DNA of 64,000 nucleotides from Malacoraja senta (Eukaryota), in assembly GCA_038087875.1 (NCBI GenBank), contig CM075977.1, forward strand, positions 312,232,001 through 312,296,000. The letters run 5' to 3'. Positions 3,919-63,279 of the stretch are shown here, piece by piece. Position numbers and translations under genes: made by a program. The notes below the pieces were generated by a model. That model was not told where the DNA came from. It made no database searches and saw only the letters and a list, made by a program, of their open reading frames with translations. The first letter of the stretch is position 1; every line of letters begins with the position of its first letter.

Positions 3919-6900
3919 TTATTTATTAGAAGTACATTACATCACAGCCACATACATTAATACTCGTCATTTATATCTTCTTACAATTAATGTACTCCCT
4001 TTATTTTTTTTTTTACGCTAAAGAAAGAAAAGATTGAAAGAGAGAAGAAAGTGAAGGAAAAAGTGCAAGTGTAGAAAAGTGTAGAAAATGTAACAACAAA
4101 AAAAAAAAAAGGACGAGGACCCTATGAAAGCGAAATTAAAAACAAAAAAAAAAAAGAGTTAAGAAATAGGCCCTAAGAAAAGAAAAGAGAGAGAGAAAAA
4201 AAGAAAAACAAATGTTTTTTTTTTGAGCATCACGTAAATAGGACATACCAACTCTTCAACTATCATCCCCCCTTACCTGACCTCAATTTTTTATTTTTTT
4301 AAAGTACTTTTGCACCCTATGTTTGTAATAATTCTATAAATGCAGACCACGTCAGGTGGAAGTGATCTGGTTTACCTGCTAGGAGGAGTCTTATCTCTTC
4401 AAGGTGTAGTGTTTCAAACATATTTGAAATCCACATATTTATAGTTGGTATTGGAGCCTTCTTCCAAAATTTTAGAATTAGCTTTTTTCCAGTTATTAAC
4501 CCATAATCCATTAATTTCTTTTGAAACACATTTAGTTCTGGATCATCTTCCGTTATTCCGAAGATAATCCATTCTGCTTTGGGTATCAGTCTTGTTTTAA
4601 ATAACTTTGTAAAGATTTCAAAAATTTCATTCCAAAATTTTTGAATTTTTGTACAGAAGACAAATGAGTGCGCTATAGTTGCTTCTTGGGATTGACATTT
4701 ATCACAAATAGATGATACGTTTGGGAAAATTTTATGAATTTTAGTTTTCGAATAATATAATCTATGTAAAATTTTAAATTGTATTAAAGTGTGTCTTACA
4801 TTAATCGAGCATTTATGTACTTTTAATAAGTATTCATTCCAACTTTCCTTTGAAATTTTAATAGCTAACTCTTGTTCCCAGTCTCTTCTGATACCCTCCG
4901 TAGATGGTATTTGTACATTTAAGATAATATTGTACAAATATGATATTAAGTTTGCTGATTCCGCTTTTGTCTGCATTGCCTCGTCCAGTACATCTGCTGG
5001 GTTATTATGATGATCTTTTATATATTTTTTCAAATAGTCGCATATTTGAAAGTATTTAAAATATTGATTATTTCCGAGTTTATATTTTATTTGTAATTGT
5101 TGAAATGAAAGTAATTTTCCAGTTTCATACAAGTCACCAAGCGTTTTAATTCCTAGTCTATCCCATTGTGTATAAGCTTTATCTATAATAGAAGGACTAA
5201 ACGAAGGGTTATTGACTATAGGTAATAAAAGTGATAAGTTTCTTAATTTTAAATTTTGTTTTATTTGTTTCCAAATACGGATTGTACTATGAATAATTGG
5301 GTTCTTATTATAGTTTATGTTATTCAATTTCATTGGAGAGAGGAGGATCGCTCCAATGTTTCTAGAGGAGCAATCCTCTTTCTCCATTACAATCCAGTCT
5401 ACTTGCTGGGCGGAGTTATCCATCAGTTGAATCATGTTTTTAATATTTACTGACCAATAATAATACATAAAATTGGGTAGTGCTAGACCCCCCAATACTT
5501 TAGATTTATTCAGATGGGTTTTTTGTATTCTATGTGATTTATAGTCCCATATAAAATGAGTGATATCTGAGTCGAGTTTTTTTAAAAACTTCTTAGGTAA
5601 GTATATAGGAATTGATTGAAATAGGTATAAAATTTGTGGTAAAAAGATCATTTTTATTGCGTTTATTCGGCCTATTAAAGACATCGGAAGCGTTTTCCAG
5701 AATTTAATTAATGTATTCAGTTTATTAAGTAGGGGGTCAAAATTTGCCCTGAGCATACCTTGATATGCTCTGGTAATTTCGATTCCCAAATATTTAAATT
5801 TTTCTGTAGCTATTTTAAAAGGGAATTTTAAAAGATGTGTTGAATCTTTCGGTTTTATTGACATAATTTCACTTTTATTCCAATTTATTCTATATCCAGA
5901 AAAAGATCCGAAGTCTTCAATTAAATTTAATATATTTGGTATAGTGATTTGAGGTTTTGTAATATACAATAATATATCATCCGCGTATAAAGATATTTTA
6001 TTATATGAGTCTTTAGTATTATATCCATGAATATCAGGGTGTATTCTAATTTTTTCTGCTAGCGGTTCAATAATGAGAGCAAACAGCTGTGGTGATAATG
6101 AGCATCCTTGTCTATTTCCCCTTGATAGTTGAAATTTCGAGGATAATATGTTATTAGTAAGTATTCTAGCTGTAGGTTTGTTATATAGTAACTTAATCCA
6201 TAAAATAAAATTCTCTCCCAGTTGAAATTTTTGTAATACTTTATCCATATAATTCCATTCTACTTGATCAAATGCTTTTTCAGCATCCAGCGAAATAATT
6301 GATAATTCTTGATCTTCAGATTTGTGTGAGTGCATTATGTTGAGTAGACGTCTCATATTATTAGAAGAATATCTCTTAGGGATAAACCCTGTCTGATCTG
6401 GGTTTATTAATTTACTAATGTATTTACTTAATCTTCTGGCTAATGTTTTCGCTAATATTTTTTGATCTGTGTTTAACAATGCTATAGCTCTATATGAGCC
6501 AGGATCTTCTAAATCCTTATTTTTCTTAGGTATTAATGTAATCGTTGATTCCGCTAATGTATCAGGTAGTATTCGTTTTTTAAAAGCGTATTGGTACATT
6601 TTTTGTAATCTTGGTATTATTTTTTCATAAAAGTTTTTATAAAATTCATTAGTAAATCCATCAGGGCCTGGTGTTTTTCCATTTTTTAGTGAGTTTATTG
6701 TATCTTCTAATTCCTTAATTGAGATTTGTGCACCCAGTTCCTCTTGTTCCTTCAGCTCTAACTTTGGAAGATTACAGGTATCCAAGAACTTTGTGATATT
6801 ATTGGAATCAATTATCGTTTTAGATGTATACAAATTCTCGTAAAATTGCGCAAATCTTTTATTAATATCCTTCGGTGTTGTTAATAATTCCCCTTTATCT

Positions 6901-17141: not shown

Positions 17142-17453
17142 TTAGTTTAGTTTAGTTTAAAGATACAGCACGGAAACAGGCCCTTTCGGCCCACTGGGTC
17201 CGCTCAGACCAGCGATCCCCGTACATTAACACTATCCAATACCCACTAGGGACAACTTTTACATTTACCAAGCCAATTAATCTACATACCTGTACGGCTT
17301 TGGAGTGTGGGAGGAAACTGAACATCTTGGAGAAAACCCACACAGATCACGGGGAGAACCTACAAACTCCATACAGACAGTGTCCATAGTCAGGATCGAA
17401 CCTGGGTCTCTGGAGCTGCATTCGCTGTAAGGCAGCAACTCTACCGTGCCTCC
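17142..17453 (-). mobile_element. HE1-type V-SINE (tRNA-derived head, CR1-like tail)
   Basis: Reverse complement of the 18919-19226 family, with B box GGTTCGATCC and a (TAAAC)n tail. Confidence 0.85.
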
Positions 17454-18918
17454 GTGTATAAAAGAATGAGAAGTGATGTAATGAGATGTAAGAGTTTCTA
17501 TGGGATATGGACAGGGTGGATGCTGAGAAGATGGTTTCCGGATTGAACTCAGGGGACATAAAATAAGTGGCTACCTATTTGCGTTGGAAATGAGGAAGAA
17601 CTTATTTAATGACGATATTCATGAATCTTTGGAAATCTGTATTCCAGTGAGCTGTGAAGGCAGAGTCTTTGAATATCTTCAACAGATTTACAGATATTTT
17701 AACCACAAGAGAATCAAGAGGCAGCGCAGGCTCAAGGGGTTAATTGTCTTTATCTTTTTCCACAAGTCTTATGTTATTTTTTGGGGAATATATTTTCATT
17801 CTCTGAAATATTAATACTGTTTCCCTTCCCACAGATGTGCATAACTTGCTGAATATTTGCAACATGTTCTGCTTTCATTTTCTCAACTTCCCAATCATAT
17901 ATAGAAATAATGTATTTATTTGTTCTTCCTCCCAAAATGGATAACTTCACTTGTTCTCACATTATACTCCATCCACCAACTTTTTACTCATGCACCTAAC
18001 CTATCTACGTATTAAATATCTGTGGTCTTCCCACAATTTGCAATGTGTTTGTTCTTTGTATCAACAAATTTGGCCACAATGCATTTTGTCCCATCATCCA
18101 GGTCATGAATATACATTGCAAATAGTTAAGCCACCAGCACTAATGCCTGTGGCATTATTATTATTATATGTACTGTCTGGAAGTTGGAATAATACATTGA
18201 ATTAAATGACCATGACTGATGTGATAAAATTGTCAATCATTAATGTATTTGACAGAAATGATTCAAGAGTTCACATTTTCTTTCAAGACAATAATTCACA
18301 CCATTCTTATAAATGCCCCAGATGATTCACATGTTCCAGGATAATTTGGCTTCATCTCAGCTGGAATCATGCTTTTACTGTGATAATCTTTTTACTGCGA
18401 TAATCTTTTGCACTTAACAATTAAAAACTAATCTTCTAGATGGGTGCTCAGGAACTCCCTAAATTGTGCATTTCTGTTTCTGGAGTCTCAGCTGGGATTC
18501 TTAATCCAGATACAGTTGGTTGCCCCAGACAAAAAATGCAAAAATATGTGTTACTAGGATACCCAGGTCACGCTCTAGATCTCTGAAAATGAAGCACTCA
18601 CAGTTCTTTTGTGGACAGTTGGATGGGCAAGTTGAAACTTGTATTTCCGAGGTCTTCAGTGAAATGCAAATTCAGAAAGGCCCCAAAATAATAAAATGTC
18701 TGGAGACACAAAAGACTGCAGAAATTTGTCCAACCCTGGAAGCAGGGCATTTTGGAGGACAGGAGAGTTATAATTTTAGATCTAAAGTCAGCAGGTATAC
18801 TGGAAGATGGAGCAAACAAAATAACTGCTGGAGAAACTCAGCAGGGCAGACAGCAGAGGAAGTCCAGCAATCCAGAGGAAATGTCGACTCAAATCGTAGG
18901 GTATCTACATAGGCCATA

Positions 18919-19226
18919 GGATGGCACGGTGGTGCAGCGGTAGAGTTACTGCCTTACAGCGCCAAAGACCCGGGTTCGATCCCGACTACGGGTGCTAACT
19001 GTATGGAGTTTGTATGTTCTCTCCGTGACCACTTGGGTTTTGTCCGATATCTTCGGTTTCCTTCCACACTCCAAAAACGTACAGGTTTGTAGGTTAATTG
19101 ACTTGGTATACGTGTAAATTGTCCCTAGTGTATGTAGGATAATGTTAATGTGCGGGAATTGCTGGTCAGTGGGACTTGGTGGGCCGAATGGCCTGTTTCC
19201 GCGCTGTATCTCTAAACTAAACTAAA
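18919..19226 (+). mobile_element. HE1-type V-SINE, full length, between inverted Penelope-derived arms (~18790-18855 / ~19250-19297)
   Basis: A box TGGTGCAGCGG, B box GGTTCGATCCC, V-domain gagtttgtatgttctc..ggtttccttccacactccaaa, CR1-like tail gggccgaatggcctgtttcc, (TAAAC)n. Confidence 0.9.
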
Positions 19227-29677: not shown

Positions 29678-29925
29678 TGGCACAGTGGTGCAGCACCAGA
29701 GACCCAGGTTCAAACCTACAGACTACGGGTGCTCCGTATAGAGTTTGTACGTTCTCCCTGTGACCACGTGGGTTTTCTCTGGGTGCTCTGGTTTCCTCCC
29801 ACATTCCAAGGACATGCAGGTTTGTAGGTTGATTGGCTTCTGGAAATTGTCCCTTCTGTGGACGATAGTGCTAATGTATGGGGATTGCTGGTTAGCGCGT
29901 ATTACGCTCTATCTCTAAAACCTAA
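29678..29925 (+). mobile_element. HE1-type SINE (degenerate)
   Basis: Same head, V-domain and tail as 18919-19226. Confidence 0.8.
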
Positions 29926-30879: not shown

Positions 30880-32815
30880 TGTTTTTGACTGTCCTCCCTA
30901 AATTCTATCAACATGTGCAATGCCCCACAAGAGGTAAAAACATACTGGAACATGTTTATAGCAACATCAAACATGGGTACAAAGCATCGCCTCTCCCCCA
31001 GCTGGGCCAATCTGACCACATCTCCCTATTTTTAACTCAAGCATATAGACCACTCATCAATATGGTCAAACCAGCTGCTAGGGACATTCAAGTGTGGCCT
31101 GAGGGAGCTTCTGGGCAATTACAGGACTGCTTTAACTGAAGCGACTGGGACTTGTTTGAGGATGAGGACATTGACACCTACACCTCCATTGTACTCTTTT
31201 ACATAAAAAGCTGTGTAGACAATGTCACTAACATTAAACGCTGCAGGCCCCGATGGCATCTCAGGGCGAGTACTTAAGTCCTGTGCTACGCAGCTAGCTC
31301 CGGTGCTCACTACAATATTCAACCTCTCCCTGGACAAGTCCGTGGTCCCTGCCTGCTTCAAAAAATCCATAATTGTACAGGTACCTGAAAATGCCTCCCC
31401 AGCTTGTCTGAATGACTACCGTCCGGTGGCCCTCCCCTCGGTAGTCATGAAATGCTTTGAGAGGCTGGTGAAACACATCTGCGCCTTCCTCCCTCGCAAC
31501 ATGGACCCGCTACAATTCGCATACCATCCGAACAGATCCACGGACGATGCGGTCTCACAGGTTTTGCACACCGCTCTCTCTCATCTAGACAGCCAGAAGG
31601 GGCGCTATGTGAGGATGCTGTTCATAGACTTCAGTTCAGCCTTCAATACGATGGTCCCCACCAGACTGGCCGAGAAGCTACTGGAATTAGGGCTCAACAC
31701 CCCCCTGTGTGCGTTGGCCCTGGACTCTCTCACCGCCAGTCCCGAGGTAGTCAAGATGGGAGGGAATACATCGAAGTCCCTCACCTTGAGCACAGGATCC
31801 CCCCAGGGTTGCGTCCTCAGCCCCCTACTGTACTCCCTGTACACAAATGACTGTGTGGCCAGGTTCAGCTCCAACTCGATAATCAAGTTTGCTGATGACA
31901 CTGTGATGGTGGGCCTGATCTCAGACAACGATGAGAAGGCCTACCGGGAGGAGGTGGCTGATCTGGCACTCTGGTGTCAGGACAACAGCCTCCTCTTGAA
32001 CATCAAAAAAGCTAAGGAGCTGATCGTGGACTTTAGGAGGGCTCATCATCCGAGGACGTACACACCATTGAAGATAAATGGGGATACTGTGGATAGGGTG
32101 AGCTGCTTTAAATACCTGGGAGTCCACATCTCTGAGGACATGACATGGACATCACACGCTGCTGCACTCGTGAGTAAGGCAAGCAGCGCCTTTACCACCT
32201 CAGGCAATTGAGGAAATTCAGAGTGTTTCCGAGGATCCTCCAGTGCTGTTACTCAGCAGCTGTGGAAAGCATCTTGTCCGGAAATATCACAATCTGGTTT
32301 GGGAATTGCTCTGCCCAGGACAAGAAGGCTCTGCAGAGAGTAATGCGTTCGGCCGAACGCACTATGGGAACTACACTCGCCCCTCTGCAGGAACTATACA
32401 TCAGGAGGTGCAACTCCAGAGCCAATAAGATCATGGGACAACCCTTCCACCGCTGCAACGGACTGTTCCAGCTGCTACGGTCAGGCAAACGCCTCCGTTA
32501 CCATGCTGTGAGAACGGAGAGGTTGAGAAGGAGTTTCTTCCCAGAGGCCATTAGGACTGTAAACTCCTATCTCACCAGGGACTATCTTTACTGGACCATT
32601 CTACTGGGTTTTTTTAATTGCTGTTTTTTTTTCCCTTTTTCCTTCTGCCCACAATATTTAATATGTAAAAGTATGTGATTCTGTTCCATTCTGTTTGTAG
32701 TTTGTTTGTTTGTTTGTTTGTTTGTTTTTTGCACAAAGTCCGCGAGCATTGCCACTTTTTATTTCACTGCACATCTCGTATGTGTATGTGACGAATAAAC
32801 TTGACTTGCCTTGCC
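30880..32815 (+). mobile_element. Rex1/Babar LINE: endonuclease-end fragment (30880-31236) abutting a young RT-to-3' segment (31237-32815)
   Basis: CPTRG..GQSDH (APE end); [43 protein letters not shown]. One frameshift at ~32185. AATAAA and a (CTTGA)n tail. Confidence 0.92.
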
Positions 32816-32972: not shown

Positions 32973-34139
32973 CAGACGCATACGAAAGGACTCATCTCAT
33001 CCCGCACATCACTTGTTTCCCCTTCTGCCCTCAGGAAAGCGTTACAGGTCCATCACATCACACACCACAAGATTAACAAACAGTTTCTACCCCAAGGCCA
33101 TCACCACTCTGAACTCTGCACTGAACACACACCCCCCCCCATAGCCAATATTTTGTACTGCTACAACACTATACTGTGAAATATTACACATTCTGACGAC
33201 TCAATGTTTTTCTTGTCGTTTGTGTTGTTTCCATTGTCGTTATTATTTATCTGATACGTTGGAGCTTCACTCGGGCAGTGCGCCTGAAATTTCGTTATAT
33301 GCATTTACAATGACAATAAAGTGTATTATTGTTATTATTATTGTTGCTTTTGATATTAGATCCGATACCAATATTGAATGTTCAAAATGTGCTGATCAAA
33401 AACGTTTTTTGGTTTACATTTTAGAAAGTCCATTCCCTTCTTTCCTATTCTATATTAACACATATCTAAAAGCCTCACATTATCACTGCTTGAAATTTCT
33501 TATATTTTCTTGCAATTTGTCCAAAAGGTTAATTCCATTTGATGTTCTTAATGTGCATCTAACAACATCATACATCTTCAAGTTTCTTCGTTCAAACCAA
33601 ATATACAGCCTTAAAATTCTCAGGGCCATTCACTTTTTCTTGTGCCCTGGTTGTGAATTTGATCAATACCCATTGTCCTCTTTTCCCTTGTGTGAAAATA
33701 ATATCCAGAAATATTAATATGGTAATGTTTTACCATATTCAGATCAAGGCTTTGTTATTGCTACTCTTGTAATCTCATGGGTTTTAAACCCATCATATAT
33801 CATGCTCTGGCCATTTATGTTCATTCACACTCTCCTTACATGGTATTTCCACCTTTGTTGATCTATTTTATGCTATTGTATCAAAAAGACAGCATTCCAT
33901 TGAGCCAACCTAATCACCAATGTTATCAAAATATAAATCTAAAGATTTCGAGAAACAGGTTGAGTTGTAAAACAAAGGCATTTTTAAAGTGATGCAATCC
34001 AAATGTTTAGAAAGAAAATCAATTTTCTTATAATTCTCTATTTCGTTAATGTGAATTAATAGTTCTAAAACATGGTACTTAAGCGGAGCAACCAATAAGA
34101 AAAGATCACCAAGAAGTGTCACTTTGCAATGGTAACTTT

Positions 34140-34792: not shown

Positions 34793-35093
34793 TTTAGTTT
34801 AGTTTAGTTTAAAGAGACAGCATGGAAACAGGCCCTTGGGCCCAACGAGATTGCATCAGCAATCATCCATACATTAGTTCTATCCTACACACTAAGGACA
34901 ATTTACAGAAGCCAATTAACTTACAAACCTGCACGTCTTTGGAATGTGGTAAGAAACTGGAGCACCCTGAGAAAACCCACATGGTCACAGGGAGAAAGTA
35001 CAAACTATATAGTCAGCACATGTGGTCAGGATCAAATGCGGGTCGATGGCGCTGTAAGTCAGCAACTCTACCCGCTGTGCCACTGTGCCGCTC
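34793..35093 (-). mobile_element. HE1-type SINE
   Basis: Reverse complement of the SINE family, with (GTTTA)n on the + strand. Confidence 0.85.
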
Positions 35094-38159: not shown

Positions 38160-39743
38160 GAGAAATAGATTGGGTAGATGCACAGAATTTCTTGCCTAGT
38201 GCAGGTGATTCGAGGACCAGAGGGCATAGGATTAAGGCGAAGGGAAAAAGATTCAATAGGAATCTGAGGGGTAACTTTTTCACAGAGGGTAGTGAGTGTA
38301 TGGAACATGCTGCCAGGGGAGGTAATTGAGGCTGGGACTATCTCAACATTTAAGAAACAGTTTAGACAGGTACATGGATAGGACAGGTTTGGAAGGATAC
38401 AGACCAAATACGGGCTGGTGGGACTAGTGTGGTGGGCTGACAAAGTCAGCATGGATTTATGAAAGGTAAATCATGTCTGACGAATCTTATAGAATTTTTC
38501 GAGGATGTAACTAGTAGAGTGGATTAGGGAGAACCAGTGGATGTGTTATGTCTGGACTTTCAGAAGGCTTTCGACAAGGTCCCACATGAGACATTAGTGT
38601 ACAAATGTAAAGCACACGGTATTGGGGGTTCAGTATTGATGTGGATAGAGAACTGGCTGGCAGACAGGAAGCAAAGAGTAGGAGTAAACGGGTCCTTTTC
38701 AGAATGGCAGGCAGTGGGGTACCGCAAGGCTCAGTGCTGGGACCCCAGCTATTTACAATATATATTAATGATTTGGACGAGGGAATTGAATGCAACATCT
38801 CCAAGTTTGCGGATGACACGAAGCTGGGGGGCAGTATTAGCTGTGAGGAGGATGCTAGGAGGCTGCAAGGTGACTTGGATAGGTTGGGTGAGTGGGCAAA
38901 TGCATGGCAGATGCAGTATAATGTGGATAAATGTGAGGTTATCCACTTTGGTGGCAAAAACAGGAAAGTAGACTATTATCTGAATGGTGGCCGATTAGGA
39001 AAAGGGGAGATGCAACGAGACCTGGGTGTCATGGTACACCAGTCATTGAAAGTAGGCATGCGGGTGCAGCAGGCAGTAAAGAAAGCGAATGGTATGTTAG
39101 CATTCATAGCAAAAGGATTTGAGTATAGAAGCAGGGAGGTTCAACTGCAGTTGTACAGGGTATTGGTGAGACCACACCTGGAGTATTACGTACAGTTTTG
39201 GTCTCCTATTCTGAGGAAAGACATTCTTGCTATAGAGGGAGTGCAGAGAAGGTTCACCAGACTGTTTCCTGGGATGTCAGGACTTTCATATGAAGAAAGA
39301 CTGGATAGACTCGGCTTGTACTCGCTAGAATTTAGAAGATTGAGGGGGGATCTTATAGAAACTTACAAAATTCTTAAGGGGTTGGACAGGCTAGATGCAG
39401 GAAGATTGTTCCCGATGTTGGGGAAGTCCAGAACAAGGGGTCACAGCTTAAGGATAAGGGGGAAGTCTTTTAGGACCGAGATGAGAAAAACATTTTTCAC
39501 ACAGAGAGTGGTGAATCTCTGGAATTCTCTGCCACAGAAGGTGGTTGAGGCCAGTTCATTGGCTATATTTAAGAGGGAGTTAGATGTGGCCCTTGTGGCT
39601 AAAGGGATCAGGGGGTATGGAGAGAAGGCAGGTACGGGATACTGAGTTGGATGATCAGCCATGATCATATTGAATGGCGGTGCAGGCTCGAAGGGCCGAA
39701 TGGCCTACTCCTGCACCTATTTTCTATGTTCTATGTTTCTATG
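38160..39743 (+). mobile_element. CR1 3' fragment (38160-38433) followed by a young CR1 RT-to-3' copy (38434-39743)
   Basis: Long open frame to 39645 with GVPQG, FADD, RPHLEY; one small frameshift at ~38715; (TTCTATG)n tail. Confidence 0.92.
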
Positions 39744-41404: not shown

Positions 41405-44400
41405 GATAGACAATAGACAATAGGTGCAGGAGTAGCGCATTCGGCCCTTCGAGCCAGCACCACCATGCTTACATTCAGTGACTGACGTAAAAGGACACCC
41501 AGGTCTCGTTGCACTTCCCCTTTTCCTAATCTGACACCATTCAGATAATAATCTGCTTTCTTGTTCTTGCCACCAAAGTGGATAACCTCACATTTATCCA
41601 CATTATACTGCATCTGCCCACTCACCCAACATATCCAAGTAACCCTGCATCCCCATAGCATCCTCTTCACAGTTCACACTGCCACCCAGCTTTGTGACAT
41701 CTGCAAATTTGCTAATGTTACTTTTAATTCCTTCATCTAAATCATTAATATATATTGTGAATAGCTGCGGTCCCAGCACCAAGCCTTGCGGCACCCCACT
41801 AATCACTGCCTGCCATTCTGAAAGAGAACCGTTAATTCCTACTCTTTGTTTCCTATCTGCCAACCAATTTTCTAACCATGTCAATACCCTACCCGCAATA
41901 CAATGTGCTCTAATTTTGCCCACTAATCTCCTGTGTTGGACCTTATCAAAGGCTTTCTGAAAGTCCAGATACACTACATCCACTGGCTCTCCCTTATCCA
42001 TTTTATTTGGTACATCCTCAAAAAATTCCAGAAGATTAGTCAAGCAAGATTTCCCCTTCGTAAATCCCTGCTGACTTGGCCCGATCCTGTTACTGCCATC
42101 CAAATGCGCCACTATTACATCCTTGACAATTAACTCCAGCATCTTCCCCATCAATGATGTCAGGCTAACTTGTCCATAATTCCCTGCTTTCTCTCCCTCC
42201 TTTCTTAAAAAATGGGATAACATTAGCTACCCTCCAATCCACAGGAACTGATCCAGAATCTTTAGAACATTGGAAAATGATCACCAATGCATCCACAATT
42301 TCTAGAGCCACCTCCTTGAGTACCCTGGGATGCAGACCATCAGGCCCTGGGGATTTATCAGCCTTCTGTTCCATCAGTCTACCCAACACCATTTCCTGAC
42401 ATGTGAATTTCCTTCATTTCCTCCGTCACCCTAGATACTCTGTCCCCTAGTACATCTGGGAGATTGTTTGTGTCTTCCAACCAAAGTAACTGTTCAACTC
42501 GTCTGCCATTTCCATGTTCCCCATAATAAATTCACCTGTTTCTGTCTTCAAGGGACCCACATTTGTCCTAACTAATCTTTTCCTTTTCACATACCTAAAT
42601 AAGCTTTTATTATCCTTCTTTATATTCTTGGCTAGCTTACCTTCATACTTTATCTTTTCTCCCCATATTGCCTTTTTAGTTACCTTCTGTTGTTCTTTAA
42701 ACATTTTCCCAATCCTCTGACTTCCCGCTCATCTTTCCTATGTTATACATCTTCTCTTTTATTTTTATACTGTCCTTGACTTCCCTTGTCAGCCATGGTC
42801 GCCTCTTACTCCCCTTAGAATCTTTTCTCCTCTTTGGAATGAAATGATCCTGCATCTTCTGGATTATTCCCAGAAATTCCTGCCATTGCTGTTCCACCGT
42901 CATCCCTGCTACAGTCCCTTTCCAGTCAACTTTGGGCAGCTCCTCCCTCATGCCTCGATAGTCCCCTTTGTTCAACAGCAATACTGACACTTCTGATTTT
43001 ACCATCTCCCTCTCAAATTGCAGATTGAAACATCATATTATGGTCACCACCTCCTAATGGTTCCTTTATCTTGAGTTCCCTTATCAAATCTGGTTCATTG
43101 CACAACATTAAATCCAGAATTGCCTTCTCCCTGGTAGGCTCCAGTACAAGCTGCTCTAAGAATCCATCTTGGAGGCACTCCATAAACTCCCTTCTTGGGG
43201 TCCAGTACAAACCTGATTTTCCCAGTCTACCTGCATGTTGAAATCTCCCATAACCACCGTAGCATTACCTTTGTTACATGCCAATATTAACTCCTGATGC
43301 AACCTGCACCCTACTGTGTATCCAGGCTACTGTTGGGGGCCTATAGATAACTCCCATTAGGGCCTTTTTGTCCTTACAATTTCTCAGTTCTATCCACAAT
43401 GACTCTACATTTTCTGATTCTATGTCACCCCTCGCAAAGGACTGAATTTCATTCCTTACCAACAGAGGTACCCCACCCCCTGGGCCCACCTGTCTGTCTT
43501 TTTGATAGGAAACATAACTCTGAATATTCAGGGTTCAGCCATGTCTCTGTAATTCCCACAACATCATACCTACCAATCTCTAACTGAGCTCATCCACTTT
43601 ATTTCTTATACTTCGCGCATTTATATATAACACTTTTAATTCGTTCACTTCCCCCCTCACACCGGTTCCTATTTCACCTGATCTGACTCTCTTATCCCTT
43701 CTTGAACTTTCCATCTCATTAATTTGGGTGACTTTCGTAACTTTACCTGTATTCCCTTTCCCTTTAACTCCATCCTTATACTTCCAATTTGTCGACCCCT
43801 CCCTATTAGTTTAAACCCACCCGTGTAGCACTAGCAAACCTGCCTGCCAGAATGTTGGTCCCCTCCAGTTAAGGTGCAACCCGTCCCTTTTGTACAGGTC
43901 ACCCCTACCCCAGAAGAGATCCCAGTGGTCTATGTCGAAATCCCTGCCCCCTGCAGCAGCCCCTCATCCACACATTCAGATACCCTATCTCCCTGTTCCT
44001 GCCCTTACCAGCACGAGGTACTGGAAGCAATCCAGAGATAACCACCCTATAGGTCCTGCTTTTCAGTCTTCTTCCTAACTCTCTAAACTCACGTTGCAGA
44101 ACCTAATTCCTCTTCTTCCCGACGTCGTTTGTGCCGACATTCACAACCACTTCCGGCTGCTCCCCTTCCCCCTTGAGCATGCTCACCAATCGGTCCGAGA
44201 CATCTTGGACCCTGGCACCAGGGAGGCAACACACCATCCTCGAATCTCGCCTGTTGCCACAGAATCTCCTGTCCGTACCTCTCACTATTGAGTCACCCAC
44301 CACTATGGCGTTACCTGACGTAGGTCTCTCCGGTTGAGCCTCAGCGCCAGGATTTGATTAAAAGACCTGTCCGCCGCTCAGACTGGAAGTGTCGTCCGTC

Positions 44401-47160: not shown

Positions 47161-47726
47161 GTGTCTTCTTTGTGAATACACTTTGCTACAATCAGAAAAG
47201 GGAGTCAAATCTCACCCTATATTTTTGAAATATTATTGCAATCAATACTGCAATATTACATTTTATGCTAACTCTAATTTTGGTGTAATTAACCTGCTGT
47301 TAGTTAGTTCCAAGCCCAAAGTACTATCATGTAAGGATTGAAACATAAATTAAAATTGTATTAACAAGAAAAATTAATCGTTAACCAATTTCTATATATT
47401 TTTCTATAAATTAAAAAAGCTTATAAAATTTTAATTATAAAAATATTTGCACTTAATAACACCTCAGATAAGACAAATAGTGTACTCTGCTGCATTATAA
47501 ACTATGTTTTATCATATAATTTGGAATTATTCTTACCATTACAGAGGAATTTTACGGCTGAATTTTAATGCTGGTTGTGGGTTTTGCTTCTGGAGGGTAA
47601 TTAAAATGGGCAAAGAAACAAGTGTCTGAAAACCAACGTCAACGCATCCACTTGTGGGTTTAAAAGGGTGTGTTTCATTGCATCCACAGATGCCCCTCGG
47701 GAGAGATAAGTTATTGCTTATCTTGT

Positions 47727-49575
47727 TTAGGCCCAGAGGATAAATCCCCTGGGCCTGATGGATTACATCCAAGGGTCTTGAGGGAGATAGCGGTGGGGAT
47801 TGTGGATGCATTGGTGATAATTTTCCAAAACTCCCTGGAGGCAGGAACGGTCCCAGTGGATTGGAAAATGGCCAATGTAACACCTATATTTAAAAAAGGA
47901 AGTAAACAGAAGGCGGGTAACTATAGACCGGTTAGTCTAACATCGGTGGTGGGTAAAATGTTAGAGACAATTATTAAAGAAACACTAACGGGGCACTTGG
48001 ATAAACATGACTTCATCGGACAGAACCAGCATGGTTTTCTGAAGGGGAAGTCCTGTTTAACGAATCTGCTCGAATTCTTTGAGGAAGTAACAACCCGGGT
48101 GGATAAAGGGGAACCGGTGGATGTGGTATACTTGGACTTCCAAAAGGCTTTTGACAAGGTGCCACATAAGAGACTATTGCTAAAAATAAAAAATTATGGG
48201 ATTGGGGGTAATATATTAGCATGGGTAGAGGATTGGCTAACAAATAGGAAGCAGAGAGTGGGGATAAATGGTTCATACTCGGGATGGCAACCGGTAACTA
48301 GCGGGGTTCCGCAAGGGTCGGTGCTGGGACCCCAGTTGTTCACAATTTATATAAATGATTTGGAGGAGGGAACCAAGTGTAATATATCAAAATTTGCGGA
48401 CGATACAAAAATGGGAGGAAAAGTAGGGGATGAGGAGGATAGGAAGAGTCTGCAAAAGGATATAGATAAGCTAGGTGAGTGGGCAACAACTTGGCAGATG
48501 ACATTTAATACTAATAAATGTGAAGTCATTCACTTTGGGAAAAAAAATGATAGGGCAAGTTATTTTCTAAATGAGGTGGAGCTGCGTTGTAATGCAACGC
48601 AAAGGGATCTAGGGGTAGTAGTACATGAATCACTAAAAGTTAGTATGCAGGTGCAGCAAGCAATCAGGAAGGCCAATGGAGTTTTGGCCTTTATTGCTAG
48701 GGGGATTGAGTATAAAAACACGGAGGTCTTGCTGCAGCTGTACACAGTATTAGTGAGACCACATTTGGAATACTGTGTACAGTTCTGGGGTCCATACTTA
48801 AGAAAGGATGTACTGGCCCTGGAGGCAGTGCAGCGATGGTTTACAAGATTAATTCCTGCAATGAGGGGATTGACATATGAGGAAAGGTTAAGTAGGCTGG
48901 AACTCTACTCTTTGGAGTTTAGAAGAATGAGAGGCGATCTCATTGAAACATATAAGATCGTGAGGGGCCTTGATCGGGTGGATGCACCGAGGATGTTCCC
49001 AATGATCGGGGAAACTAGAACTAGGGGACATAGTTGTAGAATAAGGGGGGGCTCTTTTAAAACTGAGATGAGGAAGAACTTCTTCACCCAGAGGGTGGTT
49101 AATTTATGGAATTCACTGCCCCAGGGAGCAGTGGAAGCAGAAACATTAAATATATTTAAGTCTAAAATAGATGGTTTTTTAGCTGCCAAGGGGATAAGGG
49201 GCTACGGGGAGAGGGCAGGGATATGGACCTAGGTATGGTTAGTATAGTAAGACCTGAGTGATCTCCTGGACAAGTGTCGATCGCCTGGATTGGGGTCGGA
49301 GAGGAATTTCCCGGATTTTTTTCCCGAATTGGACCTGGGTTTTTATCCGTTTTTTTGCCTCCCCCAGGAGATCACGCGGTTCTTGGGGTGGAGAGGGGTG
49401 ATAGCGGTATAAAGGGGAGGGTAGTGTCTTGTGTTCTGTGTCTTGTGTCTACTGTTTGTGGGTAAGGGTGTCTGTTTAGTGTTCAGCCATGAGCGAATGG
49501 CGGTGCGGGCTCGATGGGCCTGGTGGTCTACTCTCGCACCTACTTTCTATGTTTCTATGTTTCTATGTCTATGTT
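47727..49575 (+). mobile_element. Young 5'-truncated CR1 with an uninterrupted ~500-aa ORF2 RT/C-terminus and an extended 3'UTR
   Basis: Open frame to the stop at 49232 (KSPGPDG, NYRPVSL, DFQKAFDK, GVPQG, FADD); (TTTCTATG)n tail at ~49543-49575. Confidence 0.95.
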
Positions 49576-56285: not shown

Positions 56286-57549
56286 ATCAAAGGAGAGTGG
56301 CAGACTACTGTTTTGTACATCCTTTGGGTCTGGTGATTTAAAGAGTTTTATTTATGGGAGGCACGGCTGGATGACTTTAGATTACTGATAGACCACATGA
56401 TACATGAATGGTGGTCCCGTCACCTTGGGTGCTTGTTAAACAGTAAAACTTCAAGATTGAATCAGTTCTGAAAACAAAATGTAAACTCTGGAGATATCTG
56501 ATCTCAGATTGGCTTCATTTTATTTAGAGCCTTATTGAAGCCTTGTAAGAATGGAAACCATGATTAACTAATTGATGTCAAGGTTTTTGTTTAATTCTAC
56601 CTTTCATTTTTTTTTCATGCATTGCCAACTAAATCCAGACACTGTTTAAAGTCAGCAATGATTCCTAATGTGGAAAACAATGAAACTTAATCTAAGGGCA
56701 AACCTTTTCCTGTTAGACTTCTATCTGGGTCTCATTTCTGCACTATGGCACATATGTGACTAGCAAAATATTGATAGAAGACTGGATAGGCCAGGGCAGG
56801 GAGACCCAGAGCAGCAAGCAAACACATCCAAAAGCAACGGATCAGGTATCTTAAAACTAACACTCACACAAACAAAGGCTTTGCACTGCCTGGTCGTACT
56901 GATCTTATTGCTTTCTTTAGATGCCCTATTGAACCAGGATATAATTCCATGAGGTATTTTACCAGATTGTGTGAGTTTGCCAGGTCTTGTGTCACTTTCG
57001 TTACAGCTTAGAAGCATGCCTGAAGACACATATAGCTGGTCCCCAAAGGGATAACAACACTAAGCTTTGGATGTTTTGTATAATTTAACATAGCTTTTTT
57101 TTCTAGAATAAATTTTGATTATCTTTGTTTTGTAAGTTACTTTTAGCCTTAACTATTATTTTTGGTTGACTTTATTATGACAGATAATCAAAACACATAA
57201 CTAAAGTGCATTGAGCTTTATCCTTATAAAGAAATGATGTGGGAGAATGTGTTAAGGTGCTTCACAGGTGTGAGTAAGATGGAACTTTTTCAAGGCCGAT
57301 GAAGAGGGAAGGAATGACAAAATTAATTTTAAATGAAAGTTGGAGAGATAGAGGGAAAGAAAGAAATTCTAGTAAATGGTTTCACTGAAAAGTCAAGTTG
57401 GTGGAGATGTTGGGGACCAGAAGCTCATGTGGGGCAAGAAAGAGAGGAAAAGTTCACCAACAGAATATGATACTGTCTGTAGACGTTTACATAAATTGAC
57501 GTTTAAGTAGGTTGGAGGATATTGGAGAACAACTATGGTGAAATAGGGG

Positions 57550-57815
57550 TGGAACAGTGGAACAGTGGTAGAGTTTCTGCCTTACAGCGCAAGAGACCCG
57601 GTTTCGATCCTGACTACGGGTGCTGTCTGTACGGAGTTTGTACATTCTCCCTGTGACCGCGTGAGTTTTCTCCAGGTCCTCCAGTTTTCTCCCATATTCC
57701 AAAGAAGTGGAAACAGGCTCTTTGGCCCAACCTGCCCACGCCAACCAACAAGCCCCATCTACATTAGTCCCATCTGTCCGCGCTTGTTAGGCAGAACCTC
57801 TACCACTGTGCCACC
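57550..57815. mobile_element. HE1-type SINE head/body (+) joined to inverted tail and head pieces (-)
   Basis: B box GTTTCGATCC and V-domain, followed by reverse-complement tail and head segments. Confidence 0.75.
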
Positions 57816-57852
57816 TGTAGTTGTTCTCCAATATCCTCCATCCTACATAAAA

Positions 57853-60800
57853 GGATTCTCTTGAACTTCTACAGGTGTACAGTAGAGAGCATATTGACTG
57901 GTTGTATCATCGCCTGGTTTGGCAACTTGAACGTCCAGGAGCGGAAAAGACTGCAAAAAGTTATGAACACTGCCCAGTCCATCACTGGCTCTGATCTCCT
58001 CACCATCGAATGAATTTATCGGAGTCGCTGCCTCAAAAAGGCAGCCAGTATCATCAGAGACCCACACCATCCTGGCCACACATTCATTTCACCACTGCCA
58101 TTAGGAAGAAGGTACAGGAGCCTGAAAACTGTAACGTCCAGGTTGAGGAACAGCTTCTTCCCTACAGCCATCAGGCTATTTTACTTCGGAGTCACGTGAG
58201 TGACTACGTGAAGAACCCCGCCAGTGCGCCTGCGCGTCATTACGTCAGACGCATTGGCGCAAACGGACGCGAGGAGCAGAGCTCCTCTAGTAGAATTGTA
58301 GTTTTCAACTACAAGATAAGTATAAACTTTTTTGGAAGTATTTCCGTGTCCGTTTACTGTGGGTCTGTGGGGATTTTTTCCACAGGCATCATGGAAAAAA
58401 TGGGCAGGGGGAGGAGGCGAGCGGCACAGCCGATAGAGAGTCGTGAGATTGCGGTCGGCGACCAGCCACCTCTGACCACGGTACAGTCGCCAGCAGAAAG
58501 CATAGCGACTGTGGATATTGGGGCTGAAGTGAATTTAGTCAGCACCAGTGGGGCAATGGAAAGCCGATAAAAAGCTGCGGGAATGCGGTCGGTAAAGGAC
58601 TGCCTCATACCCTACAACAGTCGCCGGCTGGGAGCGGGGCGACTGTGGACTTGTGTATTAAAGAAAAGAACGGCACCAGCGTCAGTTGGGTGCTAGGCAA
58701 CATACAAGTCAGGGCCATGGAGCAAGAGTCAGTTTGGGATTCACCTCCAAGGCTGGATACCACTTTCAGAGTGGATATTCCAAATGGAGAACCTGTACAC
58801 AGGTTGCTCCAACAAAACATACTCCAGGAGGAGTGATGTCAGAACCAGGCTCCAGAAGCCAGGTCAGCAGCACCTAGTAAAGGGCTGCTTGATAGCACCC
58901 TCATTGATGAGGCGCATGCACAGGGTCAGCAGAGTTTCCAAAACAAGTGAAGACGGCAGCTGCCAGATGGGGTATTCCTGGCAGTACGATTTGCTGCTCT
59001 GTGAGAGTTCTGACCCTGAGTCTAACGGTGAGGCCGATACAAGCGATGACGGCAGCTGCCAGATGTTTTACTCCTGGCAGTACGATTCGCTGCCCCGTCA
59101 GAGTCAGGAGAGCCATTTGGAAATGAAGTGGCCTCTGTGATCAACTATTGTGTCTGCCATCAGCTCTAGTAGCTTACGATGGATGAAAATGCCAAAAAAG
59201 CACGAGATCCCAAGGAACTGCGTATTGCTGAAAGTACTAGCAGTGAACCAAGATATAAGGGGTCAGATGGGCGAAGGCATGTAAGCCTAAGGAAAGTAAA
59301 CTGCAGAGAATATTGAAGCTGCTGGGTTGATGAACAACTGCAATTTGCAAAACAATGGATGGAGGCCATGGATGGAGATGCATCAAGTGGCACTAAGGTT
59401 GCTATGTAGCGCCCACTTCAAGATGAATTGTTTCAGGAAGTATGCCATTCGGTCCACCATCAACCCAAAGTTGCAGCAACTCTGTAAAGCCCAGCAATGT
59501 GCAGTCATTCAACTTATTCTTCAGAGAAAAAAACTCATGAATCATGGGAAAGAGTTGGATAATGAGGCAAAAACAGCAAAGTTGATCACAACATCAATGG
59601 TCGTCAAGTCTGCAAAGAGGATGTATCCTTTCAGACATCATACAAAATCCTGGACCGACATCAGGATCAAATCGACCATTGAAGCAGGTACGCAGTTGAT
59701 GCCCTGCAGCAGGAAAACGAAAAAGCGTGGGTTTTGCCTGCCAGGAGCCAGAGACCACAGGTTACTCAGATGACAAAGGAGGTAGGTGGACCTGGTTCTT
59801 ATGGGAACATATTAAGGCAAAAACAGCCAAATATTGGAAGCAAATTACTTCAATTATTATTCTGAGTATTATAGAAAGGTTTCGAATTGATTCGATTCAA
59901 ATACTGGTTTGCCATCCAGCATGTTCCAAGCAGAACACTCCAAATTCACATAAAAATATTTGATGGAGGTTCAAGCTGAATTGAAAACTTGTTTATAAAC
60001 AAGTAATTGAAAGGTCGGTTTATCAAAACCACCAAATTGTGTTTACAATTTCTCAACCTAAAAAGGTGAGGAGTATTTTAGATCTGACAAGTCTTTAAAA
60101 TTTTGTGAAGTATAGACACTTCAAAATGGAGACTTTGAGACTGCCAAACAATTTATTTCAAAAAAGATGTTTTATGGCACATAGATCTGAAAGATGTATA
60201 TTACTTAGTGTTTGTTCATTTATAAGATAAAATTATCTGAAGGAACAATTATGGCAATTCAAAGTTCTGTCTAACGGGTTAACTTCAGTTCCTAGAATTT
60301 CACTAAACTGGTAAAACCAATTTTGGGGCTAATTAGAGTCCAAGGACAGATGTGGATGGCTTAACTGGATGATGTCCTAATTAGGACGAACAAGAGAATT
60401 AGTGAGTTATCTCTCTCAAATTATTCAAACCACTTTTGAAAGTTGGGTTTAATTCACCCAGAGAGAAATTAAGTTTAACGATACTTACAACAATTGATTA
60501 TTTGATTCAATTGAAAGGGTAGTAATTTACCAAGGGTAAAGGGTAAAGCTAATTGATGGTTGTATTAAGCAGTTGGAAAAGCAACAATCTTCAATTAAGA
60601 CAGGTGGCCAGCTTGTTAGGAGAATTAGTGTTATTTCCAGCAATACATTATGGGCCATTGTACTACCAGCAGCTGCAGACTGCAAAAAGAAAAAACACTA
60701 AGATGCATGATGGCCATTTTTTGATAGGCCATGCAATTAAACAACAAATGCTGCTTCTGATTGCAGTAGTGGATTTAACATGTCTTCAGTAGTTCAAGCA

Positions 60801-63035
60801 AGATACGGATTGAACAGCCTTCCATGGTCTTAACAGACTGATATCAGTGTATTAGGATTGGTGCCACTGAAAAGGTATCCATCTGTGGACAGATGGAATA
60901 TGGAAGAAGTATTATTTTACAGACATGGAGAATCAACATTTTAAAGTCTATTGGAAGGCTTATGAGCTACAAGCTTGTTGTTAAATACAACTAATCTGCA
61001 TGTTCAGTTTCAAATTAACAACACTACATCAATGGCATGTATTAATTGTATGCGTGGAATTTCCATGATAACAAAGAATGGATGTTTAACCTTAAGATTT
61101 TTTTAATGATATAATAGTCAGATTTGGGAAGCCAGATATGACTTGTTTCCATCCAGACTCAATCACCAGTTACAGAGATATGTGTTATGGGACTACATCG
61201 GGAGACAGTAGCGATGGATGTTTCTCGCTATATTAGGATGGTATGTTGTTATATGTATTTTAATTCATCCTGTCTCATAAATCGGTGTCTGCTTAAAACG
61301 AAGCAGTATGCTGCCTCTGGGGTATTCGTGGTACCAGACGGGTCTATGCAGCCATGGTTCCCTTTGATATTGGAATTTATGACACAGTTTCTGATAAATG
61401 TTCCCAAAAGAAGGAAGTTACTGGTGTATTCGATAATTGGAGAGTAACATCCGTCATATGCCTGTATGGATGCAGGTTTAAAAAAAGAGGATTGTCTGGG
61501 CATGCTGTGGACATGCTTACAGCAGTCTGGCGGAAGAGTACTCAAAAGCAGTACATTTGTGAATCTGAGTTGTGACTCTGTGAATACTGCTTTCCCATTA
61601 TGTAAAGAATGAGGGGAAAAAATTTCTGCGTATAAAAGAATATGGAATGTTGTACGGCACATGTCTCAAATATCTTGGATTGACCTCTATTTAAGGGGTT
61701 GAGGTATAGTGCGATTTATTCACACAGAAGTATATTATTCCTCGTTTTTATTTGATGAGGTTGGAAAGACATCCTGTTGAGTCTCGTTCTTTTATTTCCA
61801 GATTAATGAAAGGAATTTTAATTCCAGACCTTCTAAACCTAGGAGGGAATCTGGAATATAGAATTGTTTTAAGCTACTTCATCAATGGAGTCTTGGTACG
61901 ATTCTGATTTGGCCAAGTTCAGCATGAAGGTAGTCATGTTTATGGCACTTGTAACATTACAAAGTTACAGATACACAGAAGTACCTCAGGATTATGTTAT
62001 GTTTTACATTTTATGAACTACTCAAATGAAGTAGGATCAGGTGTGACAGGATTCAAGATTGTTTTATTAACATATTCTATGGATCCATGTCTATATGTTA
62101 AGACATATTTATTGCAAAAAATTGAGGCTACAAAGATCTTATGAAATATGAAAACAAGATTGTTTATCATTCACAAAAAACCATACAAGATAGTGTCAGT
62201 TTAGACTATTTTAAGATGGTTAAAAACAAGTTTTAGTTGCTGCACGTGTGAACATTGATGGTTTTACATTCCATTCAGTTTAGCAGCAACATTGACGACC
62301 AGGGCGAAGGAAGTCCCGTCGATCATATTCTCACAGCCGCCAGGTGATCTAATAAATTGGTGTTTCAACACTTTTACCATCGGGCTATTGCCAATACGGG
62401 GCTGTTTGCAGATACTATATTAAGTTCTGCTTAATTTTCCCTGGGATAAAGGGGATACTATTAATTCTTTTATTCAAATAAATGAATTACTGCATTTGTG
62501 GTACAAATGTTATTATTAATGCATTATTGAATATTCTCGTTCCGAGTCAATCAATGCAGTGAGAAGCCGGGATTTGTCTGCGGCATGAAATCACAAAGCT
62601 TTAAAATCTTCACGTAGTCACTCACGTGACTCCGAAGTAAAATAGTAAGATTAAACGAGAACTTACCAAGTTTGAAGTTTGATCTTTATTTTATGAGGAG
62701 TTACGTTGGTGATTACATGCCCACCACGGCCCAACCCTCTATCATAAAGGTCAGATGGAAGTTCTTGTATTACTCGTTTTATTATGTTACTATAGTACTT
62801 CGTTTGTTGTTGTTTGTGATTTCACACCGCTGCTTCGAAGATTGACGCGCAGGCGCACTGGCGGGGTTCTTCACGTAATCACCAACGTAACTCCTCATAA
62901 AATAAAGATCAAACTTCAAACTTGGTAAGTTCTCGTTTAATCTTACTATTAAACACTTCAACCTCAAATAAGCTCTGAACTGCAATAGACTATTATTATT
63001 ACTATTATTATTGCATTACTATTGTTTGTTTTTTG

Positions 63036-63090
<55 letters not shown>

Positions 63091-63279
63091 AAATATGTGT
63101 AAATATATATATACAGTATGTGTGTACTTGTGAGTATGTGTATACATACAGACTACTTTTTTCTCTCTCGTTTATCATATTGTTTACAGTGTACCATGTT
63201 TACATATTCTGTTGTGCTGCAACAAGTACGAATTTCATTGTTCTATCTGGGACATATTACAATAAAACACTCTTGACTC
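57853..63279 (+). mobile_element. Rex1/Babar 3' end (57853-58180 and 62951-63279) split by the DIRS insertion
   Basis: NFYRCTVESILTGCIIAWFGN..RKRLQKV..SFFPTAIRL on the left. The sequence resumes ctatt|aaacac on the right, followed by a 3'UTR with (TA)n and an aataaa..cttgactc tail. Confidence 0.85.
58176..62950 (+). mobile_element. DIRS1-like tyrosine-recombinase retrotransposon: intact ITRs and ICR, decayed gag / RT-RNaseH / methyltransferase / YR
   Basis: ITR 58205-58239 = revcomp 62843-62877. ICR 62607-62716 is complementary to both termini. Remnant motifs: RHFKMET (~60114), IDLKDVYY (~60181), LSNGLTSVPRI, LDDVLI (~60365), QTDxS, QINNTT (RNase H), DLFxSRLNHQL..VVPDxSMQPWFP (MT, ~61124-61365), WRKSTQKQY, LMKGIFNSRPSKPR, HKKPY..ILRWLK, FHS, ILTAAR..FQHFYHR (YR, ~61528-62385). 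Confidence 0.93.

What the first reader, a model, noticed from the sequence alone, without database searches (positions are those of the whole stretch)
58176..62950. DIRS1-type retrotransposon whose circle-junction recombination can be read from the sequence (CTATT core)
Seen: the left terminus 58176-58214 is the exact reverse complement of ICR part 62607-62645. The right terminus 62875-62950 (76 nt) is the exact reverse complement of ICR part 62641-62716. A 35-bp ITR pair (58205-58239 / 62843-62877) also matches. The ICR predicts a circle junction ...CTTA-CTATT-TTACTT..., and the reconstructed empty Rex1 target is ...CAGG-CTATT-AAACAC. The two flanks are the reciprocal crossovers AGG-CTATT-TTAC and TTA-CTATT-AAAC. 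Established: DIRS1 elements use ITRs plus an ICR to form a circular DNA that a tyrosine recombinase integrates through short identity, without a classical TSD. Inference: this family recombines at a core within CTATT and may prefer the Rex1 3' sequence.
Basis: partly seen in the sequence, partly recalled or inferred. Interest (0 to 1): 0.75.

Follow-up and report, generated by a model that had tools for sequence, protein, structure and literature searches.

The report
Ordinary dead DIRS jumping gene insertion
This is a structurally complete but gene-dead copy of a known type of jumping gene (DIRS1-like). It sits inside an older LINE element and was inserted in the published way, through a short shared ATT, so it is a clean textbook example rather than a new mechanism.

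Summary
The left end is 39/39 complementary to the ICR, and the right end is 76/76 exact (78/79 over 79 nt). A 35-bp exact ITR is also there. The two ICR halves overlap on AATAG, so CTATT sits at both borders.

Intact DIRS1-like proteins fetched from metagenomes align colinearly along the interior as RT, RNase H, Dam-like MT and tyrosine recombinase. Every domain is broken by stops and frame changes.

The flanks join with exactly one CTATT into a LINE ORF end (..SFFPTAIRLLNTS..*), which matches paralogous LINE copies in the window. This is recombination through shared bases, not a target duplication.

That is the published DIRS1 model: a 3-bp circular junction, most often ATT. The 5-bp identity is real. 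However, 4 of 25 other DIRS1-like insertions also show two or more extra identical bases. Two 8-nt matches to the junction, about 50-70 bp downstream, were not used. A CTATT-wide core and a Rex1 preference therefore rest on one copy and are unsupported.

This scan has reported the same kind of DIRS junction several times elsewhere in this genome.

The parts
57876..58175 (+). Left flank: C-terminal part of a LINE ORF2 (..CTVESILTGC..IYRSRCLKKAASIIRDPHHPGH..SRLRNSFFPTAIR), with one in-frame stop at 58011
   Evidence: Translation. tblastn finds homologous LINE C-termini at 32262-32555, 32980-33102, 47156-46872 and 20479-20321 in the same window.
58176..58180 (+). Left copy of CTATT. ATT (58178-58180) is the class-wide junction trinucleotide. 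CT (58176-58177) is most likely target-derived and happens to match the junction.
   Evidence: literature PMC3266345.
58176..58239 (+). Left terminus. 58176-58214 is complementary to the left ICR half. 58188-58204 is the divergent ITR part. 58205-58239 is the conserved ITR part (35/35).
58240..59984 (+). Leader and presumed gag region. GC is about 0.5 and the reading frames are broken. No homology to gag was found. It holds an internal 71-nt direct repeat (58938-59008 / 59034-59104, 83%).
   Evidence: the L059 gag ORF gave no tblastn hit.
59985..60762 (+). Reverse transcriptase remnant. It spans three frames and has in-frame stops. The motif-C position reads A*LDDVLI at 60359-60382.
   Evidence: tblastn of the L061 and L059 pol ORFs gives E 5e-15 and 5e-10. 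Those ORFs carry Pfam RVT_1. Reading of the frames.
60972..61190 (+). RNase H remnant, with a gap of about 45 residues against the intact relative
   Evidence: L061 pol residues 375-489; P0075.
61058..61471 (+). Dam-like methyltransferase (MT) domain remnant (..DLFPSRLNHQ.., ..VVPDGSMQPWFP..), with frame changes near 61190 and 61453
   Evidence: phmmer hits P0002-P0005. Their relatives carry PF05869 Dam, PF17917 and PF13495. tblastn E down to 6e-15.
61477..62422 (+). Tyrosine recombinase remnant. The N-terminal SAM-like part is at 61477-61554, the core at 61764-62243, and the C-terminal box at 62267-62422 (HSIQ.. ..HFYHR). It has in-frame stops and frame changes.
   Evidence: tblastn of the L061 and L059 YR ORFs gives E 3e-10 and 1e-5. 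Those ORFs carry Pfam Phage_integrase and Phage_int_SAM. P0031 hits.
62580..62830 (+). 18-nt inverted repeat (62580-62597 / 62813-62830, 89%) that encloses the ICR
62607..62719 (+). Internal complementary region. The left half is 62607-62645 and the right half is 62641-62719. They overlap on AATAG at 62641-62645.
62843..62950 (+). Right terminus. 62843-62877 is the conserved ITR part, 62878-62894 the divergent ITR part, and 62895-62950 the right extension (rE). It ends in CTATT (62946-62950).
   Evidence: The rE block aligns with 15 other DIRS1-like families.
62951..63036 (+). Right flank. It holds the end of the same LINE ORF (..LNTSTSNKL, stop at 62976-62978) and its tail of short ATT-rich repeats. 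The tail carries three further CTATT (62990, 63002, 63019), two of them within TTACTATT.

Best explanation
A 4,775-bp DIRS1-like tyrosine-recombinase retrotransposon lies in sense orientation inside the 3' end of a LINE ORF2. Its cis-elements are intact: inverted terminal repeats, a right extension, and an internal complementary region that is the exact complement of both ends. All its coding domains (RT, RNase H, Dam-like MT, YR) are broken. It was most likely integrated by the published DIRS route. In that route, the ICR templates the joining of the cDNA ends into a circle junction (..CTTA-CT-ATT-TTAC..). A DIRS tyrosine recombinase, supplied in trans because this copy's own gene is dead, then recombines that junction with a genomic site that shares the junction trinucleotide ATT. 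The product has ATT at both borders and no target-site duplication. Here the target read ..AGG-CT-ATT-AAAC.., so identity happens to extend two bases further, giving CTATT. Shown: the anatomy, the domain remnants, the single-CTATT empty site and the absence of a TSD. Inferred: the circular intermediate, the action of the recombinase, supply in trans, and that ATT rather than CTATT is the required core.
For: Repeat anatomy is exact and not expected by chance. Domain order RT-RH-MT-YR is colinear with intact elements L059 and L061, whose ORFs carry RVT_1, RNase H, Dam and Phage_integrase. The flanks joined with one CTATT read ..SFFPTAIRLLNTSTSNKL*. This is colinear with paralogous LINE ends in the window (..AIRTVNS....AITTLNS....TVRLLAK..). 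Zero or two copies of CTATT would break the frame. The 5 nt between the ICR halves equal the border repeat. For a plain TSD this would need a coincidence of about 0.0015. The literature describes a 3-bp circular junction, with NTT in 23 of 28 families and ATT most frequent, and integration by recombination with an identical genomic trinucleotide without TSD (PMC3266345; PMC7192593). The ICR is experimentally required (PMC7192593). Control set loci: ATT is kept at 23 of 25 left junctions, and 4 of 25 have two or more extra identical bases. ICR and termini differ at 0-1 of 118 positions, so the insertion is young relative to the decay of its genes.
Against: Only one copy could be examined, so the crossover cannot be placed within the 5 nt. 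The chance of the two extra bases matching is about 0.06 by composition. It is lower if the purine preference at position -1 seen in other families (23/26) also holds here. A wider homology requirement in this family is therefore not excluded. No circular DNA, reads or sister copies were seen here. Supply in trans is inferred only from the contrast between broken genes and exact cis-elements.
Confidence: 0.85

Rival explanations
1. This family's recombination core is wider than ATT. Identity over CTATT, or at least extra bases 5' of ATT, is required or strongly favoured. CTATT-bearing sequences such as this LINE end and CTATT-type simple repeats would then be preferred landing sites.
For: The identity is exactly 5 nt and has mismatches on both sides, with P about 0.06 for the extra CT. 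In other DIRS1-like families, identity with the junction at position -1 is enriched (16/26 against a background of 0.31, p about 1e-3).
Against: The enrichment at -1 is confounded with a general purine preference. In the family with T at -1 of the junction, none of 4 flanks has T. 10 of 26 insertions share ATT or less. Two 8-nt matches (TTACTATT at 62999 and 63016) lie next to the insertion and were not used. The follow-up to s1-206926 states that sister copies share only ATT (not checked here). All 28 families in PMC3266345 were described with a 3-bp junction.
Confidence: 0.12
2. The element targets the conserved 3' end of this LINE family (called Rex1 by the reader) as such, through recognition of more than the short core.
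For: The insertion lies in the conserved ..AIRLLN.. codons.
Against: This rests on n = 1 here. LINE 3' ends are very abundant and AT-rich, so hits at ATT within them are expected. Other earlier notes place copies in L1, a SINE, a microsatellite and ordinary DNA. The clade of this LINE was not established here.
Confidence: 0.05
3. CTATT is an ordinary 5-bp target-site duplication made by a staggered cut, and the element ends are TTACTT.. and ..TCTTA.
For: A 5-nt direct repeat does flank the element.
Against: The same 5 nt sit between the two ICR halves inside the element, a coincidence of about 0.0015. No integrase or endonuclease remnant was found, only a tyrosine recombinase. Other DIRS1-like copies show the same arrangement with ATT.
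Confidence: 0.01

Closest known systems
DIRS1-like retrotransposons with ATT termini (for example AcaDIRS1/2 of Aplysia and SkoDIRS1 of Saccoglossus, in Table 3 of Piednoel et al. 2011, PMC3266345)
   Same: They share the ITRs with a conserved and a divergent part, the right extension, and two ICR halves that overlap on the complement of the terminal trinucleotide (AAT/ATT). They also share the lack of TSD, the RT-RH-MT plus YR coding set, and similar sizes for the repeat parts (ours: lICR 39, rICR 79, conserved ITR 35, rE 56).
   Different: This copy has no intact ORF. The apparent ICR overlap is 5 nt in this insertion. The host is a cartilaginous fish (a skate, according to earlier notes of this scan; not verified here).
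DIRS-1 of Dictyostelium discoideum (Cappello model, tested by Malicki et al. 2020, PMC7192593)
   Same: The ICR is complementary to both ends and is used to restore them. Integration is by a tyrosine recombinase. The element ends up flanked by the junction trinucleotide.
   Different: The Dictyostelium element has much longer ITRs, inserts mainly into other DIRS-1 copies at centromeres, and is active. The circular double-stranded form has not been demonstrated even there.
Ngaro and PAT elements (other YR retrotransposons)
   Same: They also combine a tyrosine recombinase with RT and RNase H.
   Different: They carry split direct repeats rather than ITRs plus an ICR, and Ngaro lacks the MT domain. 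This element has inverted termini and an MT remnant.

Membership tests
DIRS1-like superfamily (order DIRS) | Inverted terminal repeats | tested here: met
   58188-58239 / 62843-62894 is 52 nt at 92%, with a 35/35 exact core.
DIRS1-like superfamily (order DIRS) | Internal complementary region made of two adjacent or overlapping halves that are complementary to the left and right ends | tested here: met
   62607-62645 against 58176-58214 (39/39). 62641-62719 against 62872-62950 (78/79)..
DIRS1-like superfamily (order DIRS) | Tyrosine recombinase instead of a DDE integrase | tested here: met
   A remnant only. tblastn of the L061 and L059 YR ORFs (Pfam Phage_integrase) hits 61477-62422 at E 3e-10 and 1e-5. 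It is broken by stops.
DIRS1-like superfamily (order DIRS) | Ty3-like RT and RNase H | tested here: met
   RT at 59985-60762 with E 5e-15; RNase H at 60972-61190. Pfam on the short stop-free pieces alone was blank.
DIRS1-like superfamily (order DIRS) | Dam-like methyltransferase domain downstream of RNase H (separates DIRS1/PAT from Ngaro/VIPER) | tested here: met
   61058-61471. phmmer E 9e-6 to 8e-4, tblastn E 6e-15. Relatives carry PF05869.
DIRS1-like superfamily (order DIRS) | No target-site duplication; the element is bordered by the junction trinucleotide, once from the element and once from the target | tested here: met
   ATT lies within CTATT at both borders. One copy restores the LINE reading frame.
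DIRS1-like superfamily (order DIRS) | gag ORF upstream of pol | tested here: inconclusive
   58240-59984 has broken frames and no detectable similarity to the gag ORF of L059.
Autonomous (coding-competent) DIRS element | Uninterrupted pol and YR reading frames | tested here: not met
   The longest stop-free stretch on the sense strand is 157 codons. Stops and frame changes occur in every domain.
Ngaro / PAT | Split direct repeats (A1..B1A2B2) | tested here: not met
   The terminal repeats are inverted. The only direct repeat near the ends is a 27-nt, 85% match between ICR and right ITR that follows from the ITR/ICR design (D3).
   Only a roughly 330-bp 3' fragment is present. Word searches with its peptide were blank. 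It shares its C-terminal motif with four other LINE copies in the window.

The most novel reading that the evidence does not exclude
DIRS1-like recombinases may not use a bare 3-bp core. Integration may be biased by an asymmetric, slightly longer match to the circle junction (extra identity or a purine 5' of ATT, never 3' of it). The roughly 50-nt right-extension block, conserved from this fish element to invertebrate families, would be the recombinase's attachment site. In this family that would make CTATT-bearing LINE tails and CTATT repeats favoured targets.
Probability: 0.15. Interest if true: 0.5.

Novelty: new member of a known kind. Interest (0 to 1): 0.2.

Why it matters
This is a clean single-locus illustration of the DIRS integration model. 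The donor junction (from the ICR), the empty target (from the LINE reading frame) and both recombinant borders can all be read from one sequence. It adds nothing new to the mechanism. Its practical value is as a seed for a genome-wide census of this family's flanks. Such a census could settle how much identity a DIRS recombinase needs, a property that has not been measured experimentally (PMC7192593 says the YR's specificity has not been investigated).

Tried and rejected
- **Read laying:** No read or contig evidence on sister copies, empty alleles or circle junctions was obtained. No letters of 63078-63121 were sent to any search tool afterwards. One local self-comparison script still read the window up to 64000. 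Later scripts were cut at 63070, and nothing from those places was used.
- **Runs:** The look-up of sequencing runs listed two runs holding about 55% of the stretch's words and 16 with 5-8%.
- **Pfam:** a scan of ten stop-free pieces of the interior was blank.
- **Word searches:** searches with the MT/YR piece and with the LINE C-terminal piece were blank. One call failed on a stop codon in the coordinates.
- **Terminal 21-mer scans:** exact scans of metagenome and viral contigs were blank.
- **Exact-sequence look-up:** seven ORFs of the element are not in the protein collection.
- **P0001:** this phmmer hit is a repetitive, unrelated protein and was ignored.
- **Second LINE copy:** the copy at 2829-3242 is truncated before the motif and gave no empty-site comparison.
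- **Rows left out of the control-set counts:** L002, L003 and L005 (same left flank as L001, non-canonical ICR). L012 and L045 (contig ends). L044 and L048 (termini at or below 91% identity). L027 and L074 (a mismatch inside the terminus; both read AATT by eye). Duplicates L019, L023, L024, L056 and L075.
- **Paper search:** a search for the conserved rE motif as a string found nothing.
Full report
**Observation.**
- The left end 58176-58214 is the exact reverse complement of 62607-62645 (39/39).
- The right end 62875-62950 is the exact reverse complement of 62641-62716 (76/76). The match extends to 79 nt with one mismatch.
- The inner ITR 58205-58239 / 62843-62877 is exact (35/35). It lies within a 52-nt, 92% inverted repeat.
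- The terminal 29-34-mers occur only at the terminus and in the ICR. None is expected in 100 shuffles.
- The two ICR halves overlap on AATAG (62641-62645), so the reverse complement of the ICR spells ..AATCTTA-CTATT-TTACTTCGG..
- The genomic borders read ..CATCAGG|CTATT|TTAC.. and ..CTTA|CTATT|AAACAC..
- Identity between the target and the predicted junction is exactly five bases, with a mismatch on each side.

**What the element is.**
The interior has no sense-strand stretch longer than 157 codons without a stop. Pfam found nothing in ten stop-free pieces, and word-based protein searches were blank.

A full HMMER search with the piece 61142-61444 found four short relatives, with E from 9e-6 to 8e-4. 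The relatives of one of these carry Dam (PF05869), RT_RNaseH (PF17917) and Phage_int_SAM_4 (PF13495).

An alignment of these proteins (A1) was then used to fetch 80 metagenome loci. Two of them, L059 and L061, hold intact elements. Their pol ORFs carry RVT_1, RNase H and Dam. Their third ORFs carry Phage_integrase with the SAM-like N-terminal domain.

Their proteins align colinearly along the window element:
- RT at 59985-60762 (E 5e-15)
- RNase H at 60972-61190
- MT at 61058-61471 (E down to 6e-15 with P0002)
- YR at 61477-62422 (E 3e-10)

All of these alignments cross in-frame stops and change frame. The RT motif-C position reads A*LDDVLI. The RNase H alignment has a gap of about 45 residues. 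No gag similarity was detected.

The element therefore meets every structural criterion of the DIRS1-like superfamily, but it is coding-dead. The ICR and the termini differ at 0-1 of 118 positions. The insertion is thus young relative to the decay of its genes. That points to copying from an already dead template, with the enzymes supplied in trans. This last step is an inference, because shared defects among sister copies could not be checked.

**The target.**
The left flank is the C-terminal part of a LINE ORF2 (..SRLRNSFFPTAIR). Joined to the right flank with one CTATT, the frame continues as ..AIRLLNTSTSNKL and then a stop at 62976-62978. A short ATT-rich repeat tail follows.

Four other LINE copies in the window have homologous C-termini. 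Where readable, they continue ..AIRTVNS....AITTLNS.. and ..TVRLLAK... The reconstructed ..AIRLLNTS.. is colinear with them. Zero or two copies of CTATT would shift the frame.

I did not establish that this LINE belongs to the Rex1 clade. A plain 5-bp target duplication is very unlikely, because the same five bases sit between the ICR halves inside the element (chance about 0.0015).

**Comparison with what is known.**
Piednoel et al. 2011 (PMC3266345) describe exactly this design.
- The two ICRs overlap on a 3-bp circular junction.
- 23 of 28 annotated elements begin and end with NTT, most often ATT.
- Integration is by recombination between the junction and an identical genomic trinucleotide, without TSD.
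- The ITRs have a conserved and a divergent part, plus a right extension.

Malicki et al. 2020 (PMC7192593) showed that the ICR is required. They also restate the trinucleotide model. They note that the recombinase's specificity has not been tested and that circle junctions could not be amplified. Xenopus families use TTT (PMC9210276).

The window element is an ATT-type member. Its part sizes (lICR 39, rICR 79, conserved ITR 35, rE 56) fall in the published ranges.

**Is the core CTATT?**
Sister copies of this family could not be reached, for the reasons under limits below. As a calibration, I read the left junctions of 25 independent insertions of other DIRS1-like families in the fetched loci. 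Each was compared with its own ICR-predicted junction.
- ATT is kept in 23 of 25. Two have GTT.
- Extra identity 5' of ATT across all 26 insertions (the 25 plus the window copy): 0 nt in 10, 1 nt in 11, 2 nt in 3 (one being the window copy) and 3 nt in 2.
- So 4 of 25 others have a match of 5 nt or more.
- Where the right border is present (7 cases including the window), the first flank base never matches the junction.

A single 5-nt match therefore does not show a 5-bp core.

In the window itself, the LINE tail holds three more CTATT (62990, 63002, 63019). Two of them lie within TTACTATT, an 8-nt match to the junction, yet they were not used. Unchecked earlier notes of this scan report other DIRS copies in this genome with the shared stretch given as ATT, AAATA, ATTTTA or CTATT. 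One follow-up states that sister copies of a CTATT-junction element share only ATT. These notes are leads only.

Two points keep a wider homology requirement open:
- In the control set, identity at -1 is enriched (16/26 against 0.31, p about 1e-3).
- The flank base at -1 is a purine in 23 of 26 (p about 2e-4).

These two effects are confounded, because most junctions have A at -1.

**Verdict.**
The mechanism is the published one. The family-specific claims (a CTATT core, a Rex1 preference) are unsupported extrapolations from one copy. This scan has already found the same kind of readable DIRS junction on other DNA of this genome. Interest is low.

- The public collections on hand hold no copy of this element.
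- As a result, no sister copy, empty allele or circle junction was examined.

Noticed in passing
window 62901-62950 (and its complement 62641-62690); alignment A2 of loci: The last roughly 50 nt of the right extension align with 15 other DIRS1-like families whose proteins are only 35-50% identical. There are 17 invariant columns, including a GGTAAGT..CGTTTAA block a few bases before the terminal ATT. The block contains a small palindrome (ACTTAC..GTAAGT; AACTT..AAGTT in the window). On the sense strand it matches the consensus 5' splice-site sequence. It may be a conserved cis-element such as a recombinase site. No paper holding the motif string was found.
   Followed up: partly
loci L001-L080; Across 26 DIRS1-like left junctions, the target base just before ATT is a purine in 23 (p about 2e-4). 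In 7 right junctions, the first flank base is A in 6 and never matches the junction. This hints at a target preference wider than the published trinucleotide, roughly R-ATT-A.
   Followed up: partly
L073:1553-10418: Two head-to-tail DIRS1-like copies share one junction at about 6113. The predicted circle-junction sequence therefore exists there as genomic DNA, either as a tandem or through integration into a resident copy.
   Followed up: no
window 62580-62597 / 62813-62830: An 18-nt inverted repeat (89%) encloses the ICR and the spacer before the right ITR.
   Followed up: no
window 58938-59008 / 59034-59104: A 71-nt direct repeat (83%) lies in the presumed gag region. It duplicates a ..DGSCQM.YSWQYD.. 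peptide.
   Followed up: no
window 57502-57851: Two nested inverted-repeat pairs of SINE-like sequence (57502-57535 / 57818-57851 and 57557-57586 / 57785-57814) lie just upstream of the LINE fragment. Related SINE copies are at 17298-19075, 29691-29812 and 34932-35089.
   Followed up: no
window 4317-6833 (-), 31222-32678 (+), 38641-39645 (+), 41603-42223 (-), 47670-49232 (+): Several LINE-type reverse-transcriptase ORFs (Pfam RVT_1, E 8e-40 to 5e-12) show that the window is a dense patchwork of retroelements.
   Followed up: partly
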